From positions 310,001 through 374,000 of the forward strand of contig NIVC01000382.1 in NCBI GenBank assembly GCA_002269645.1: a DNA stretch of 64,000 nucleotides, in the 5' to 3' direction. This document shows, in pieces, positions 18,424 to 63,347 of this stretch (the first letter of the stretch is position 1; each line of letters begins with the position of its first letter). Position numbers and translations under genes: made by a program. This stretch comes from Macrostomum lignano (lineage: Eukaryota). The notes beneath the pieces are model-generated. The model was given only the letters and a program-made list of their open reading frames with translations, was not told where the DNA came from and searched no databases.

Positions 18424-21400
18424 ATGCCAAAACGAAAGCACGCGTCGCCACTAGTAGAACAGCGTCAACTAAGCGGCAACGACAAAAACAGCAACGCTAA
18501 TAATAGAGACAGCGAAGGATCTGTGCGATCTGTTGAATCGGCAAAATTGCCAACCAATGTGACGCCTGCCGGCACGGAGTCATCGAATCGACTTCAGCCT
18601 GCAACCCTGGCTTGCAATCATGTTCGTCCGGCTCCGTTCAGCGACGATCCAGACGCTCAGGCAATCCTGCAAGCCACTGACTACAGCGTGAAAGTGTCCC
18701 TAGAAGACGCTAAAGCTGGCCGCTCTGTCCGGCCAGTGCGAGTTTACGCTGACGGAATCTACGACATGTTTCATTCTGGTCACGCCCGGCAACTCATGCA
18801 AGCTAAGATGGCCTTCCCCAATGCCTATCTTATTGTTGGTGTGTGCAACGATGTGGATACCCATAGGTGAGGACTTAAGAGATGTCTAAATAGACAGTGA
18901 CTAATGTCTCAAGCATAACTGGATAGATTTTTCAACTTTAATTGGTACAAAACAAGCTGAAAATTTGCAGTTTAGCAGTTTTGCTTTTATGCTACTAGTA
19001 GTAGTTTTAGTTCAAGAAAATATCAGTAGACAGAAAGTAGAATAAAGGCAGGAGGCTGTGTGCAACCTGTCGCACTTTAAGCGACATAGGCACACAACAG
19101 GCGAGAGGCATTACTGCCCATTCCGGCAACTCCCCTGAGCAGGCACACAAGCGCGCGGATACGTACGCAGTCATACGCACAGGCACACACTCACACAGGA
19201 GTGTACAGCGGCCCTAACCCTAAGTCGGCCCTCAATGACGTTAATTGCACGAGCAGAGCCAAGCCGAGATTCCAATTTAGCCCCCCAAATTAATGTGACT
19301 GCACAGGGAATCGAGCCTGGACCGCTTGGCACATCAGAGCGCCACGGTCGACCACTGGGCTGCGCCCCCCCCCCCTCCTGTAGATACACAGTAGAATAAA
19401 TTACAATATGGCTAGGATTGCACAAGAGGTGTCACACCCATAGTTAAGGCGAAGTTTTTATGTGGTATAAATAAATTTTGTACAAATTTAATGTTTACCC
19501 CCTCCTATTGACGCAGAATGAAAGGCAACACTGTGATGCGCGAATCTGAACGCTACGAAGCTGTCCGACATTGTCGCTACGTCGACGAAGTCCTACGCGA
19601 CGCGCCCTGGTCATACGATTATGATTTCTTGTCGAAGCATAAAATCGATTTTGTCGCCCATGACGACCTACCGTACGGAGCTGGCAACACCGAGGATGTG
19701 TACAAATGGATTAAAGATCGGGGAATGTTTCTTGCCACAGAGCGAACCGAAGGCATCTCTACTACTGACGTCATTGCTCGGATCATTCTGGACTATGACG
19801 TCTATTTGCGTAGGAATTTGAAGCGCGGCTTGTCTAGGAAAGAGCTGGGCATATCCTACATGAAGGAGAAGGAGCTGCAGGTTAAGGTGAGTAACTTGGG
19901 GTTGTTCTGAATTGTTGCTGTTTTCTTTTTAATGAGTATTGGATTCATGATAATTAGAGATAATCGATTAGATAATTAGCGATAGTCTATTAGATAATTA
20001 GCGATAGTCTAATTAGATAATTAGCGATAGTCTATTAGATAATTAGCGATAGTCTATTAGATAATCAGCGATAGTCTATTAGATAATTAGCGTTAGTCTA
20101 ATTAGATAATTAGCGATAGTCTAATTAGATAATTAGCGATAGTCTAATTAGATAATTAGCGACAGTCTAATTAGATAATTAGCGATAGTCTATTAGATAA
20201 TTAGCGATAGTCTATTAGATAATCAGCGATAGTCTATTAGATAATTAGCGACAGTCTAATTAGATAATTAGCGATAGTCTATTAGATAATTAGCGATAGT
20301 CTAATTAGATAATTAGCGATAGTCTATTAGATAATTAGCGATAGTCTATTAGATAATTAGCGATAGTCTATTAGATAATCAGCGATAGTCTATTAGATAA
20401 TTAGCGTTAGTCTAATTAGATAATTAGCGATAGTCTAATTAGATAATTAGCGATAGTCTAATTAGATAATTAGCGACAGTCTATTTGATAATTAGCGATA
20501 GTCTATTAGATAATTAGCGATAGTCTATTAGATAATCAGCGATAGTCTATTAGATAATTAGCGACAGTCTAATTAGATAATTAGCGATAGTCTATTAGAT
20601 AATTAGCGATAGTCTAATTAGATAATTAGCGATAGTCTATTAGATAATTAGCGATAGTCTATTAGATAATTAGCGATAGTCTATTAGATAATCAGCGATA
20701 GTCTATTAGATAATTAGCGTTAGTCTAATTAGATAATTAGCGATAGTCTAATTAGATAATTAGCGATAGTCTAATTAGATAATTAGCGATAGTCTAATTA
20801 GATAATTAGCGACAGTCTATTTGATAATTAGCGATAGTCTATTAGATAATCAGCGATAGTCTATTAGATAATCAGCGATAGTGTATTAGGAATTAGGTAT
20901 AGCTTGGCTCATTAGATAATTAAATATCATTATGCAATTTAGCGATACTTATTATCAATGCTCGGTTGTTAAAAGCCAGGCCGCTAAGCCTCTTTGACTG
21001 ATATGGCAAATCTATTTTGAGCTGTTGTTTTCTCTTAGTTCGCTAAGCCTTGGCTAATATATGGTAGCAAATCGATCTTTTTTTCAAGATTTTTTTCTAC
21101 AAGACGATATTTTCTACTTCTAGTTTATTAATTTTTCTTTAATTCTTTAATACAGATAATGACTATGCCGGTTTTCTGGTAAGAATATTTCTCTCTACTT
21201 CCTCCGCTCTCTCTCTCCTAGGAGACATTCAGCACAATGCGCGACAGGATCGGGCAGACCAGACGCGAACTAATTGGCAAATGGGAGCAGCAATCGAACA
21301 GATTCGTTTCCGGATTTGTTTCCGTATTTGGTCACGACGGCCGGATTAGTCATTGGGTTCGGGATAAACGGCTGGCCTTTGCCAGGGCTATCAGTCCGGA

Positions 21401-21668
21401 GTTCGTACAGCTTCAGCAGGGTCCGCAGCAGCAGCAGCCTTCGCTATCTTCATCCTCAGCCTCGTCTCCGGTTGCTAAGCGAGGCAGACCGTTGCTACCC
21501 AGCGGTGCAGCTTTCTCAGACGAGGACGACGAAGAGGAGACGGAGGATTGGGACACTTTGTTCCCGAAGCTGCGGGCGGCTGCCGCGGTGCAGCACCGGC
21601 ACCAGCAGACTGGCGGGGGAGGCAGCGGCAGCAGCAGCTCCGGTAGCAGCGGATCCAATAATGCTTAA
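18424..21668 (+). CDS. PCYT1: Choline-phosphate cytidylyltransferase (CCT), 3 exons, about 419 aa
   Basis: Exons 18424-18866, 19517-19886, 21222-21668 (1260 nt, GT-AG, frame preserved). Motifs [23 protein letters not shown] (HxGH), [15 protein letters not shown] and RTEGISTTD, followed by an amphipathic membrane-binding helix and a Ser-rich tail. Confidence 0.95.
19047..19389 (-). mobile_element. tRNA-derived SINE-like insertion in PCYT1 intron 1 (antisense)
   Basis: On the minus strand: A-box CAGCCCAGTGG (19362-19352) and B-box GGCTCGATTCC (19317-19307), spaced 45 nt as in tRNAs, but the cloverleaf is broken. An 11-bp direct repeat agtagaataaa at 19036-19046 and 19390-19400 flanks the 343-bp insert. 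Confidence 0.7.
19968..20890. repeat. 22/23-bp minisatellite (tagataattagcgatagtctat)n in PCYT1 intron 2
   Basis: Period 22-23 is visible. The 23-bp variant contains the palindrome tctaattaga. Confidence 0.95.
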
Positions 21669-63100: not shown

Positions 63101-63347
63101 ATTGGCGTGCGGGTCTGTGTCCCAGATCCCCAGTTTCTGGGCCAGCCTCCCAGATCCCCAGTTGCTGAGCCAGCCTCCCAGATCCCCAGTTGCTGGGCCA
63201 GCCTCCCAGATCCTCAGTTGCTGGGCCAGCCTCTCAGATACCCAGTTACTGGGCCAGCCTCCCAGATCCCCAGTTACTGGGCCAGCCTCCCAAATCCTCA
63301 GTTGCTGGGCCAGGAAAAACCGCTTCTACAAGCTAAGCAGCAATTAA
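54179..63347 (+). CDS. UPF2: Regulator of nonsense transcripts 2 (3 MIF4G domains), 11 exons, about 1285 aa
   Basis: Exons 54179-54221, 54298-54368, 54468-54626, 55634-56354, 57310-57611, 58471-59085, 59397-59576, 59776-59979, 60899-61604, 62275-63097, 63314-63347 (3858 nt, frame preserved). Motifs [77 protein letters not shown] and an acidic tract. The first two and last exons are inferred from phase, not homology. Confidence 0.92.
54690..55518. repeat. ~31-36-bp minisatellite (atttgagtctcggcaactcagcaact + variable poly-C) in UPF2 intron 3
   Basis: Constant 26-bp core plus a variable C-run. Confidence 0.93.
56400..57296. repeat. 22-bp minisatellite (cggtagaaatccccatataaaa)n in UPF2 intron 4
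   Basis: Period 22. It is the source of three spurious minus-strand ORFs. Confidence 0.96.
57625..58425. repeat. 26-bp palindromic minisatellite (tgctactaatagtagcaatatagcaa)n in UPF2 intron 5
   Basis: Period 26; the unit contains the inverted repeat tgctacta-a-tagtagca. Confidence 0.95.
59098..59330. repeat. (TCTG)n microsatellite in UPF2 intron 6
   Basis: Direct reading. Confidence 0.93.
59612..59720. repeat. ~41-bp repeat x2.5 (ctctgattggtcagtgactgactgaataccctg) in UPF2 intron 7
   Basis: tctgattggtcagtgactgac occurs three times. Confidence 0.8.
60100..60815. repeat. 35-bp minisatellite (gggaattatttagcatggagaattattaatcaata)n in UPF2 intron 8
   Basis: Period 35 (60371 to 60406). Confidence 0.95.
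61672..62205. repeat. 21/22-bp minisatellite (cagatccctaatcccatattc)n in UPF2 intron 9
   Basis: Period 21; the unit contains CCCTAA. Confidence 0.93.
63105..63313. repeat. 28-bp minisatellite (cccagatccccagttgctgggccagcct)n in the inferred last UPF2 intron
   Basis: Period 28, about 7 units. Confidence 0.92.

What the first reader, a model, noticed from the sequence alone, without database searches (positions are those of the whole stretch)
18424..63347. Candidate long eukaryotic operon: 11 unrelated housekeeping genes on one strand, apparently resolved by SL trans-splicing
Seen: PCYT1, PITHD1, GEMIN8, DCPS, RPL37A, RPL36A, SREK1, PEX12, MED10, NUB1 and UPF2 are all on +. Under random independent orientation the chance is 2 x 0.5^11, about 0.001. 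Several gaps are mostly satellite: MED10 stop to NUB1 acceptor is about 1.56 kb with about 1.3 kb repeat; NUB1 to UPF2 is about 1.7 kb with about 1.1 kb repeat; RPL37A to RPL36A is about 1 kb with about 0.7 kb repeat. That leaves only a few hundred bp of unique DNA. Many start codons follow pyrimidine-tract-AG sites with no evident coding exon upstream (28340, 31306, 35612, 46054, 48106, 54104). I noticed a TATA-like box only before PCYT1. Established: nematodes, tunicates and flatworms resolve polycistronic pre-mRNAs by SL trans-splicing. Inference: most of this block, possibly PITHD1 to UPF2 or all 11 genes, is one or a few transcription units, which would be unusually long for an animal operon.
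Basis: partly seen in the sequence, partly recalled or inferred. Interest (0 to 1): 0.85.

Follow-up and report, generated by a model that had tools for sequence, protein, structure and literature searches.

The report
Flatworm spliced-leader operon cluster, already annotated
This is a run of eleven same-strand housekeeping genes in the flatworm Macrostomum lignano that are cut out of shared long transcripts by spliced-leader trans-splicing; this arrangement is real but already described and annotated for this species.

Summary
The window is Macrostomum lignano assembly Mlig_3_7, contig NIVC01000382.1, positions 310001-374000. All eleven named genes lie on +, nothing recognisable lies on -, and 42% of the block is tandem repeat.

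- GenBank coding regions are 5'-partial and begin exactly after those AGs.
- The assembly was polished with RNA-seq. In paralogous contigs the last 2-6 bases before six acceptors are overwritten by the SL 3' end (TTCCAG to TGCATG).

Co-transcription is supported for parts of the block.
- GenBank protein PAA84282.1 is a PITHD1-GEMIN8 chimera spliced from PITHD1's stop codon into GEMIN8's SL acceptor.
- Locus tags put PCYT1 with PITHD1, PITHD1 with GEMIN8, and DCPS through PEX12 (g1 to g5) in shared published transcriptional units.

MED10, NUB1 and UPF2 sit in separate assembled units. A single 11-gene unit is not shown.

M. lignano operons with repeat-inflated spacers, up to nine genes long, were published in 2017 and 2021. 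The finding is correct but not new.

The parts
18314..18323 (+). TATA-like box (TATATATAAA) about 100 nt upstream of the PCYT1 ATG; candidate promoter of the first unit
   Evidence: It is conserved in the third genomic copy. Its function is inferred.
18424..21668 (+). PCYT1 (choline-phosphate cytidylyltransferase) CDS; exons 18424-18866, 19517-19886, 21222-21668; intron 2 holds a 22-bp satellite
   Evidence: Pfam CTP_transf_like. Splice sites were read. The gene is 98% identical to paralog P0094, BOX15_Mlig001873g2. My own 419-aa model is not in the collection.
21669..26206 (+). PCYT1-PITHD1 spacer: 4538 bp, of which 2829 bp is satellite (arrays 21937-23008, 23833-24279, 24831-26140)
   Evidence: It holds a 12/13 match to the SL 3' end at 24548-24560. 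That match is ambiguous because it is present in two copies.
26205..27729 (+). PITHD1: acceptor TTTCAG at 26201-26206, exons 26207-26700 and 27523-27729, ATG at 26260
   Evidence: The GenBank CDS is 5'-partial from 26209 in this contig and at the same site in the third copy. The exon structure is fixed by an exact match to PAA84282.1.
27726..28340 (+). Intron of the annotated PITHD1-GEMIN8 chimera: donor AA|GTAATT overlapping the PITHD1 stop codon, spliced to GEMIN8's SL acceptor TTTTTCAG (28339-28340)
   Evidence: The predicted 503-aa product equals PAA84282.1 (Mlig001873g5) exactly. The paralog on NIVC01001228.1 has A instead of G at the donor and has separate gene models.
28348..29157 (+). 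GEMIN8 CDS (single exon; exon begins at 28341)
   Evidence: Pfam GEMIN8. The paralog acceptor reads CTG instead of CAG, a partial SL scar.
29158..31337 (+). GEMIN8-DCPS spacer: 2180 bp, of which 1417 bp is satellite (29252-30108, 30658-31217); no transcript-level link found across it
   Evidence: TATA-like motifs lie at 30217 and 30427.
31305..33373 (+). DCPS: two acceptors (TTTTCAG at 31306, ACAAG at 31337); exons 31338-32183 and 33121-33373; ATG at 31348; the intron holds (AGTC)n
   Evidence: My spliced model matches PAA84283.1 (Mlig009200g1) exactly. The 31306 acceptor reads ATG in NIVC01001228.1 and CATG in NIVC01000013.1, both SL scars.
34325..34639 (+). RPL37A: acceptor TTCCAG (AG at 34325-34326), CDS 34361-34639
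   Evidence: Pfam L37ae. The paralog has TGCATG in place of TTCCAG.
35611..35949 (+). RPL36A (L44e): acceptor TTCCAG (AG at 35611-35612), CDS 35632-35949
   Evidence: Pfam L44. An exact look-up found two contigs. The paralog has TGCATG in place of TTCCAG.
36660..37972 (+). Mariner transposon with intact transposase ORF (36846-37907), 39-nt terminal inverted repeats and TA duplication, inserted in the 43-46-bp satellite of the RPL36A to SREK1-like spacer
   Evidence: Pfam HTH_48, Transposase_1 and DDE_3. Inverted repeats. It is absent from the paralog.
38269..41393 (+). SREK1-like RRM/RS-domain gene (GenBank CDS 38335-41393, 572 aa); introns hold (TGTC)n and a 21-bp satellite
   Evidence: Its 5' end and trans-splicing status are unresolved. 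By numbering it is g4 of unit Mlig029688 in the paralog.
43385..44482 (+). PEX12: SL polishing scar TGCATG at 43385-43390, exon from 43391, stop at 44480-44482; the start codon is probably supplied by the SL
   Evidence: The GenBank CDS is 5'-partial from 43391. The paralog reads TTCATG, the same scar type seen at DCPS. The paralog protein is Mlig029688g5.
46053..46546 (+). MED10: acceptor TTCCAG (AG at 46053-46054); GenBank CDS 46055-46546 (5'-partial); first genomic ATG at 46082; the SL AUG is in frame
   Evidence: I predicted the 5'-partial product, and an exact look-up found it. The paralog has TGCATG in place of TTCCAG.
46547..48104 (+). MED10-NUB1 spacer; 1301 bp is a 29-bp satellite (46797-48097)
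48105..52397 (+). NUB1: acceptor CTTCAG (AG at 48105-48106); exons 48107-48536, 49206-49480, 49875-50136, 50944-51413, 51819-52397; the SL AUG is in frame and is the likely initiator
   Evidence: My spliced model matches PAA84289.1 (Mlig025284g1) exactly. It matches human NUB1 at E 1e-43. The paralog acceptor reads CTG instead of CAG.
52398..54102 (+). NUB1-UPF2 spacer; 1114 bp is a 23-bp satellite (52487-53600)
54103..63101 (+). UPF2: candidate acceptor TTTTCAG (AG at 54103-54104), ATG at 54179, about 10 exons, stop at 63099-63101 (GenBank 1276 aa)
   Evidence: Pfam MIF4G and Upf2. Homologs. Gene call. The acceptor is conserved but carries no scar, so trans-splicing is not shown.

Best explanation
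The block is a cluster of spliced-leader (SL) trans-spliced housekeeping genes in Macrostomum lignano. The genes are transcribed as a small number of polycistronic units (operons).

**Proposed mechanism**
- RNA polymerase II starts at or upstream of PCYT1, where there is a TATA-like box near 18.3 kb. It may also start at one or more internal sites.
- It reads through genes and through the satellite-filled spacers.
- Each downstream mRNA is released by 3' end formation of the gene ahead of it and by addition of the single 35-nt SL at a [T/C]TNCAG acceptor 0-75 nt upstream of the coding region.
- For PEX12 and NUB1, and possibly MED10, the AUG at the end of the SL serves as the start codon.

**Shown (indirectly)**
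- SL acceptor use at 8 of the 10 downstream genes.
- A spliced RNA spanning PITHD1 and GEMIN8.
- Shared published transcriptional units: PCYT1 with PITHD1, PITHD1 with GEMIN8, and DCPS through PEX12.

**Inferred**
- That GEMIN8 to DCPS, and PEX12 to MED10 to NUB1 to UPF2, are also co-transcribed.
- That the kilobase-scale satellites are neutral filler in the intercistronic RNA.
For: **Organism and known biology**
- The window is 100% identical to NIVC01000382.1 of GCA_002269645.1. NIVC is the M. lignano Mlig_3_7 assembly.
[quoted passage not shown] Operon spacers are inflated by repeats, with a repeat-adjusted mode of about 100 bp (PMC8629364).

**Acceptor use**
- GenBank CDS are 5'-partial and begin 0-2 nt after the AG at 26206, 31337, 46054, 48106 and 43390.
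- I predicted the MED10, DCPS and NUB1 partial products from the acceptors, and exact look-up found them.

**Polishing scars**
- The assembly was Pilon-polished with RNA-seq.
- At positions -6 to -1 of six junctions, 13 of 36 bases differ between this contig and the paralog NIVC01001228.1. Every change is toward the SL 3' end TTGCATG.
- Background divergence is 1.83%, giving a binomial P of 4e-14. A further scar is in the third copy.

**Co-transcription**
- PAA84282.1 equals the PITHD1-GEMIN8 chimera spliced 27725|28341.
- Locus tags:
  - Mlig001873 g2 is PCYT1 and g3 is PITHD1.
  - Mlig011471 g2 is PITHD1 and g3 is GEMIN8.
  - Mlig029688 g1 is DCPS and g5 is PEX12, with exactly three proteins between them (PAA70550-70554).
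- In this naming, the prefix is the transcriptional unit and gN is a gene within it (Supplementary Fig. 5 legend).

**Spacing**
- Unique sequence from stop codon to the next 5' end is 259-1046 bp for the nine junctions from PITHD1 to UPF2. These figures include the 3'UTRs, so they are at or below the published 1-kb criterion.

**No interruption**
- There are no - strand Pfam hits.
- Protein accessions PAA84282-84289 run consecutively.
Against: - No RNA reads were examined. All transcript evidence is second-hand, coming from annotation names, CDS boundaries and polishing scars.
- MED10, NUB1 and DCPS on this contig carry separate transcriptional-unit prefixes (Mlig020247, Mlig025284/018107, Mlig009200).
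- Nothing links GEMIN8 to DCPS or NUB1 to UPF2.
- The SREK1-like CDS starts at 38335 with no AG or scar upstream.
- UPF2 shows no scar.
- PCYT1 to PITHD1 has 1709 bp of unique spacer including the 3'UTR, above the 1-kb criterion unless that 3'UTR is long.
- TATA-like motifs occur in three internal spacers.
- Ribosomal-protein genes are expected to be expressed far above GEMIN8 or PEX12. That would be easier to explain with an internal promoter.
- The UniProt chimeras from the older ML2 assembly are low-quality predictions and count for little.
Confidence: 0.8

Rival explanations
1. Hybrid arrangement. The block consists of several shorter operons plus internal promoters. For example, a strong promoter in the DCPS-RPL37A spacer could drive the two ribosomal-protein genes, and separate promoters could drive MED10, NUB1 and UPF2. 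Read-through transcription would link the units only weakly.
For: - The published assembled units break at GEMIN8|DCPS, PEX12|MED10, MED10|NUB1 and NUB1|UPF2.
- TATA-like motifs lie at 34010 and 34020, about 300 nt upstream of the RPL37A acceptor, and also at 30217, 30427 and 42699.
- Full TGCATG scars at RPL37A, RPL36A and MED10, against partial ones elsewhere, suggest very unequal mRNA levels.
Against: - The authors state that assembled units tend to split in repeat-rich spacers for technical reasons.
- DCPS to PEX12 is one unit in the paralog even though it contains the ribosomal-protein genes.
- The spacers from MED10 to UPF2 have only 259-601 bp of unique DNA including 3'UTRs.
Confidence: 0.45
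2. All eleven genes, or PITHD1 to UPF2, form one polycistronic unit of about 45 kb driven from a single promoter.
For: - The same-strand run is uninterrupted.
- PCYT1 shares a unit prefix with PITHD1.
- Repeat-adjusted spacers are mostly below 1 kb.
- If the PITHD1-GEMIN8 chimera is counted as one model, PITHD1 to UPF2 makes nine gene models. That equals the published maximum operon size. This equality is only a coincidence, not a demonstrated link.
Against: - No transcript evidence crosses GEMIN8|DCPS or NUB1|UPF2.
- The published census found no operon longer than nine genes.
- Trans-splicing of the SREK1-like gene and UPF2 is not shown.
- The genes are expected to differ greatly in expression.
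Confidence: 0.2
3. The genes are transcribed independently and share a strand by chance or by duplication history. SL trans-splicing only trims each gene's own outron. The multi-gene units and the chimera reflect rare read-through or assembler merging.
For: - About 35 same-strand runs of 11 or more genes are expected by chance among about 71,000 gene models (my estimate).
- Spacers of 1-2 kb are long enough to hold promoters. About 2 kb upstream sufficed for reporter constructs in this species.
Against: - The PITHD1-GEMIN8 intron needs a continuous pre-mRNA.
- Five consecutive genes share one unit prefix.
- Several spacers hold only a few hundred bp of non-repeat DNA, part of which must be 3'UTR.
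- The locus fits the published operon criterion.
Confidence: 0.08

Closest known systems
Macrostomum lignano transcriptional units and operons (Wudarski et al. 2017, PMC5730564; Ustyantsev & Berezikov 2021, PMC8629364)
   Same: - Same species and same assembly.
- A single 35-nt SL ending in AUG.
- [T/C]TNCAG acceptors.
- Conserved housekeeping genes.
- Intercistronic regions filled with tandem repeats that shrink to a few hundred bp once repeats are subtracted.
- The locus tags of these very genes are those of the published units.
   Different: Nothing differs in kind. If all 10-11 genes were one unit, it would exceed the published maximum of nine genes. That is not shown here.
Caenorhabditis elegans SL2-type operons
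   Same: Unrelated same-strand genes, including ribosomal-protein genes, are transcribed from an upstream promoter and resolved by trans-splicing coupled to upstream 3' end formation. Operons hold 2-8 genes (as cited in PMC8629364).
   Different: - M. lignano has one SL and no specialised SL2.
- Spacers here are 0.6-4.5 kb (0.26-1.7 kb of it unique sequence), against about 100 bp in C. elegans.
- The SL carries an AUG that some mRNAs appear to use.
Operons and chimeric gene models of parasitic flatworms (Schistosoma, cestodes; PMC12582326)
   Same: - Flatworm SL ending in AUG.
- Mostly 2-gene operons, with a maximum candidate of nine genes.
- Chimeric gene models that fuse neighbouring cistrons are taken as signs of polycistronic pre-mRNA, with spacers of up to several kb.
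- Cis-splicing into an SL acceptor occurs, as in the PITHD1-GEMIN8 chimera.
   Different: That work used a spacer threshold of 300 bp or less. Satellite-filled spacers are a Macrostomum feature. Conservation of gene order with those species was not tested.
Kinetoplastid polycistronic transcription units
   Same: Long same-strand arrays of functionally unrelated genes, each resolved by SL addition. Promoters are few.
   Different: In kinetoplastids all genes are trans-spliced and units hold tens to hundreds of genes (my own knowledge). In M. lignano only about 30% of genes are trans-spliced, introns are common, and ordinary promoters such as TATA boxes exist.

Membership tests
M. lignano SL-resolved operon (criterion of Ustyantsev & Berezikov 2021) | Adjacent genes in the same orientation, not interrupted by a gene on the other strand | tested here: met
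   Eleven Pfam-identified genes lie on + and none on -. GenBank accessions PAA84282-84289 are consecutive.
M. lignano SL-resolved operon (criterion of Ustyantsev & Berezikov 2021) | The downstream gene of each pair is SL trans-spliced | tested here: inconclusive
   - Indirectly met for PITHD1, GEMIN8, DCPS, RPL37A, RPL36A, PEX12, MED10 and NUB1. The evidence is 5'-partial CDS starting after the AG and/or SL polishing scars.
- Not shown for the SREK1-like gene or UPF2.
- No reads were examined.
M. lignano SL-resolved operon (criterion of Ustyantsev & Berezikov 2021) | Repeat-adjusted intergenic distance below 1 kb | tested here: inconclusive
   - Unique distance from stop codon to the next 5' end is an upper bound because it includes the 3'UTR. 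It is 259-845 bp for eight junctions.
- It is 1046 bp for the SREK1-like gene to PEX12.
- It is 1709 bp for PCYT1 to PITHD1.
- Poly(A) sites are unknown, and only TRF repeats and the mariner were masked.
M. lignano SL-resolved operon (criterion of Ustyantsev & Berezikov 2021) | Genes derive from one precursor RNA (a transcriptional unit with several trans-splice sites) | tested here: inconclusive
   - Met for PITHD1-GEMIN8, by an exact match to the chimeric protein.
- Met by shared unit prefixes for PCYT1-PITHD1, PITHD1-GEMIN8 and DCPS to PEX12 in the paralogous copies (naming).
- Not met for MED10, NUB1 and UPF2, which carry separate or unknown prefixes.
C. elegans-type SL2 operon | A specialised SL (SL2) used for downstream genes | not testable with these tools
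   The literature reports a single SL sequence in M. lignano. All scars match that one SL.
C. elegans-type SL2 operon | An intercistronic region of about 100 nt | tested here: not met
   Spacers are 611-4538 bp in total and 259-1709 bp without repeats.

The most novel reading that the evidence does not exclude
PITHD1 to UPF2, or PCYT1 to UPF2, is one polycistronic unit of about 37-45 kb holding 10-11 protein-coding genes. Its intercistronic RNA would consist largely of kilobase-scale satellites and would carry a live mariner. That would make it the longest operon documented in M. lignano, where the published maximum is nine genes, and among the longest in any animal. It would also show that trans-splicing-coupled processing tolerates spacers ten times longer than in nematodes.
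Probability: 0.2. Interest if true: 0.45.

Novelty: already known. Interest (0 to 1): 0.25.

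Why it matters
However, the biology is already published for this species. 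SL trans-splicing, polycistronic transcriptional units and repeat-inflated operon spacers are all described, and these genes already carry transcriptional-unit locus tags in GenBank.

Two practical by-products may be more useful than the operon call itself.

- **Corrupted acceptor sites in the reference assembly.** Mlig_3_7 carries SL-derived polishing scars at heavily used trans-splice acceptors (CAG changed to ATG or TGCATG).
  - The scars corrupt splice-site and start-codon annotation. The apparent genomic ATG of PEX12 is one example.
  - They may contribute to the acceptor motif being found at only 9551 of the 21,754 published sites. I did not test this.
  - They can also be read as built-in markers of SL sites.
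- **Start codons supplied by the SL.** PEX12 and NUB1, and perhaps MED10, appear to take their initiator AUG from the SL.

Tried and rejected
- **SL and RNA searches.** The full 35-nt SL has no match in the window with up to 3 mismatches. There are no Rfam families and no tRNAs. The window therefore holds no SL RNA gene.
- **Look-ups that failed.**
  - MED10 starting at its genomic ATG is not on record. The acceptor-defined 5'-partial form is.
  - My 419-aa PCYT1 model and the first exon of the SREK1-like gene are not in the collection.
- **The UPF2 homology search** did not return the M. lignano protein, so nothing beyond 64 kb could be fetched.
- **Supplements.** PMC8629364 has no supplement held as text, so no operon list. 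The gene names do not occur in the PMC5816591 supplements.
- **Gene-model brute force.** Searching NUB1 introns with a narrow donor-motif list gave wrong models. It was solved with homology anchors. The SREK1-like gene could not be reconciled with 572 aa using canonical sites.
- **AATAAA close to acceptors.** It occurs within about 35 nt upstream of 3 of 10 acceptors. I judged this not above background.
- **The 12/13 SL match at 24560** is identical in two copies, so it cannot be called a scar.
- **UniProt chimeras from the ML2 assembly** (SREK1-like+PEX12+MED10, and PEX12+MED10+NUB1) are frame-broken predictions. I rejected them as serious evidence.
- **The sigma-70 promoter scanner** was not used because it is irrelevant to a eukaryote.

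Full report
**Identity of the window**

An exact look-up of the single-exon RPL36A protein found it on two contigs of GCA_002269645.1. The fetched locus L002 is 100% identical to window 25632-45949, and L003 covers window 36055-56546. The window is therefore NIVC01000382.1:310001-374000. NIVC00000000 is the Macrostomum lignano Mlig_3_7 assembly (Wudarski et al. 2017, PMC5730564). Two paralogous copies of the locus exist. One is on NIVC01001228.1 (loci L001 and L004) and the other on NIVC01000013.1 (locus L005). This fits the duplicated genome of the sequenced DV1 line.

**Check of the observation**

- Pfam scans of concatenated stop-to-stop ORFs outside tandem repeats recovered all eleven genes on the + strand. 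They also recovered a mariner transposase and a short duplicate of RPL37A coding sequence.
- The - strand of 17-64 kb gave nothing, and neither strand of 1-18 kb gave anything.
- NUB1 matches human NUB1 at E 1e-43.
- UPF2 and PCYT1 have clear homologs.
- The name 'SREK1' rests only on an RRM plus an RS-rich tail.
- Tandem repeats make up 42% of the block.
- The AG sites it listed all exist and fit the published trans-acceptor motif [T/C]TNCAG.

Three corrections apply. TATA-like motifs also occur in three internal spacers. The mariner adds a twelfth + strand ORF. The P of about 0.001 is post hoc: among about 71,000 gene models, some 35 same-strand runs of this length are expected by chance, so orientation alone proves little.

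**What is already known for this organism**

- M. lignano has one 35-nt spliced leader, CGGTCTCTTACTGCGAAGACTCAATTTATTGCATG.
- About 30% of its genes are trans-spliced and about 15% lie in operons.
- The authors noted that operon spacers are inflated by repeats. After subtracting repeats the spacer length peaks at about 100 bp, and they used 1 kb as the cut-off.
- The largest operons they found had nine genes, and there were two of them (PMC8629364).
- The 2017 annotation distinguishes 'transcriptional units' (often polycistronic precursors) from the genes cut out of them using SL-read and poly(A)-read peaks. In the names, the prefix is the unit and .gN is a gene within it.

**Evidence for trans-splicing at the listed sites**

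No reads could be examined, but two independent traces exist.

*First trace: 5'-partial coding regions.* GenBank coding regions are 5'-partial and begin 0-2 nt after the AG.

| Gene | CDS starts at | AG at |
|---|---|---|
| PITHD1 | 26209 | 26205-26206 |
| DCPS | 31339 | 31336-31337 |
| MED10 | 46055 | 46053-46054 |
| NUB1 | 48107 | 48105-48106 |
| PEX12 | 43391 | see below |

I predicted the MED10 product from the acceptor, and the exact look-up found it. The version starting at the genomic ATG was not on record. My spliced DCPS and NUB1 models starting at the acceptors match PAA84283.1 and PAA84289.1 exactly.

*Second trace: polishing scars.* The assembly was polished with Pilon using RNA-seq reads as well as genomic reads. 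Abundant SL-containing reads can therefore overwrite the last bases of the outron. When this contig is compared with NIVC01001228.1, unique sequence differs at 1.83% (199 of 10894). The acceptors differ far more.

| Gene | This contig | NIVC01001228.1 |
|---|---|---|
| RPL37A | TTCCAG | TGCATG |
| RPL36A | TTCCAG | TGCATG |
| MED10 | TTCCAG | TGCATG |
| DCPS (31306 site) | CAG | ATG |
| GEMIN8 | CAG | CTG |
| NUB1 | CAG | CTG |

Thirteen of the 36 bases at positions -6 to -1 differ, and every change is toward the SL 3' end (binomial P 4e-14). The third copy reads TTCATG at the DCPS acceptor.

PEX12 reads TGCATG|GCT on this contig and TTCATG|GCT in the paralog. This is the same scar pattern. 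The native site is therefore probably TTCAG|GCT, and the apparent genomic ATG of PEX12 is an artefact. UPF2 has a conserved TTTTCAG acceptor but no scar. The SREK1-like gene has neither an AG nor a scar at its annotated 5' end.

**Evidence for co-transcription**

- *A chimeric protein on this contig.* The annotation fuses PITHD1 and GEMIN8 into a 503-aa product. The only sensible GT-AG solution uses a donor AA|GTAATT that overlaps the PITHD1 stop codon, joined to GEMIN8's SL acceptor at 28340. The predicted protein is identical to PAA84282.1. The paralog on NIVC01001228.1 has A instead of G at that donor and has two separate gene models. A spliced RNA of this kind needs a pre-mRNA that spans both genes.
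- *Shared locus-tag prefixes.*
  - PCYT1 is Mlig001873g2 and PITHD1 is Mlig001873g3 on NIVC01000013.1.
  - PITHD1 is Mlig011471g2 and GEMIN8 is Mlig011471g3 on NIVC01001228.1.
  - On that same contig DCPS is Mlig029688g1 and PEX12 is Mlig029688g5. Exactly three proteins lie between them (PAA70551-70553: RPL37A, RPL36A and the SREK1-like gene). The next copy's DCPS is g6.
- The published RNA-seq assembly therefore contains units that link PCYT1 with PITHD1, PITHD1 with GEMIN8, and the five genes from DCPS to PEX12.
- *Genes outside shared units.* MED10 (Mlig020247) and NUB1 (Mlig018107, Mlig025284, Mlig034491) have their own prefixes. UPF2's prefix is unknown.
- The authors warn that assembled units tend to break in repeat-rich spacers. 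These are therefore minimum extents.

**Spacing**

Distances from each stop codon to the next 5' end, after removing TRF arrays and the mariner, are as follows.

| Junctions | Unique bp |
|---|---|
| Eight junctions | 259-845 |
| SREK1-like to PEX12 | 1046 |
| PCYT1 to PITHD1 | 1709 |

These figures include the upstream 3'UTRs. Most or all junctions from PITHD1 onward would therefore pass the published 1-kb criterion. If the chimera is counted as one model, PITHD1 to UPF2 makes nine gene models, which equals the published maximum. I cannot show that this locus is one of the two published nine-gene operons.

**Most likely mechanism**

- Transcription starts at or upstream of PCYT1, where a conserved TATA-like box lies at 18314-18323. 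It may also start at internal sites.
- Polymerase reads through genes and satellite spacers.
- Downstream mRNAs are released by SL addition at the mapped acceptors.
- The SL's terminal AUG is in frame for PEX12, MED10 and NUB1. It is the only plausible initiator for PEX12 and NUB1, and the NUB1 homology to the human protein begins about 5 residues into the exon.
- For the other acceptor sites the SL AUG opens short out-of-frame ORFs (a longer 59-codon one on RPL36A).

My confidence levels are:

| Reading | Probability |
|---|---|
| The block is operonic, with several multi-gene SL-resolved units | about 0.8 |
| Internal promoters also contribute | about 0.45 |
| A single 10-11-gene unit | about 0.2 |
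| Independent genes with only noise-level read-through | about 0.08 |

**Comparison with known systems and novelty**

The locus belongs to the already described class of M. lignano operons, and its genes carry that annotation's unit names. It differs from C. elegans SL2 operons in having one SL and kilobase-scale spacers. It resembles the parasitic-flatworm cases in which chimeric gene models betray polycistronic precursors (PMC12582326). The finding is correct but already known. Only the unproven single-unit reading would add anything, namely a record length.

**Left unexplained**

- The 5' end of the SREK1-like gene.
- Whether PCYT1 is capped or trans-spliced. The paralog CDS begins just after an AAAG with no pyrimidine tract, about 95 nt downstream of the TATA box.
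- What Mlig001873.g1 is.
- What begins at the exact 12-nt SL match at window 1699.

Noticed in passing
window 43385-43390; L001 8886-8891 and 9976-9981; L004 about 12765-12775; L005 about 21770: The reference assembly carries SL 'polishing scars'. The last 2-6 bases of outrons at heavily used trans-splice acceptors are replaced by the SL 3' end (CAG to ATG, CATG or TGCATG). The likely cause is that Pilon polishing used RNA-seq reads. These are assembly artefacts that corrupt acceptor sites and also mark SL sites. I found no report of this in the papers searched.
   Followed up: yes
window 43391, 46055, 48107: The AUG at the end of the SL is in frame with PEX12, MED10 and NUB1. PEX12 and NUB1 have no other usable start codon, so the SL probably supplies their initiator. 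For the other acceptor sites the SL AUG opens short out-of-frame ORFs (a longer 59-codon one overlapping RPL36A).
   Followed up: partly
window 36660-37972: An intact mariner element is inserted in the satellite between RPL36A and the SREK1-like gene. It has a 353-aa transposase ORF, 39-nt terminal inverted repeats at 90% match, and a TA target duplication. It is in the same orientation as the genes and is absent from the paralogous contig, so the insertion is recent.
   Followed up: yes
window 36258-36360: A fragment of about 100 bp of RPL37A coding sequence (residues about 17-50) is embedded in the 43-46-bp satellite downstream of RPL36A. The surrounding stretch (window 35120-36661) aligns to the paralog at 94%, but I did not check the fragment itself there.
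   Followed up: partly
window 1688-1699 (+ strand): An exact 12-nt match to the SL 3' end (ATTTATTGCATG) lies here, with about 0.008 expected by chance. No ORF and no Pfam hit follow it. It may be a scar marking a trans-spliced non-coding transcript at the far left of the window.
   Followed up: partly
window 24548-24560 (+ strand): A 12-of-13 match to the SL 3' end (AATTTATGCATG) lies between PCYT1 and PITHD1. It is followed about 220 nt later by a strong donor (CTAG|GTGAGA). It is identical in the third genomic copy, so it could be native sequence, or it could be an upstream SL site of a 5'UTR exon of PITHD1.
   Followed up: partly
window 29252-30108 and 41632-42167 versus L001 3206-5120 and 15371-16638: Satellite arrays in spacers and introns sit at the same places in the paralogous copies but differ in copy number by up to about 1.2 kb. 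The arrays therefore predate the duplication and are still changing.
   Followed up: partly
window 38183-41631 versus L001: The unique sequence of the SREK1-like gene region is 100% identical between the two contigs, while flanking unique sequence differs by 1-5%. This suggests recent gene conversion or an assembly or polishing effect.
   Followed up: no
window 10000-18000: An AT-rich stretch (26-33% G+C) of about 8 kb upstream of PCYT1 has no recognisable genes. It contains copies in both orientations of a short repeated element whose translations read like ...LLATHACKSLLAESSHVTT... at about 11.6-11.9 kb and 14.3-14.5 kb.
   Followed up: no
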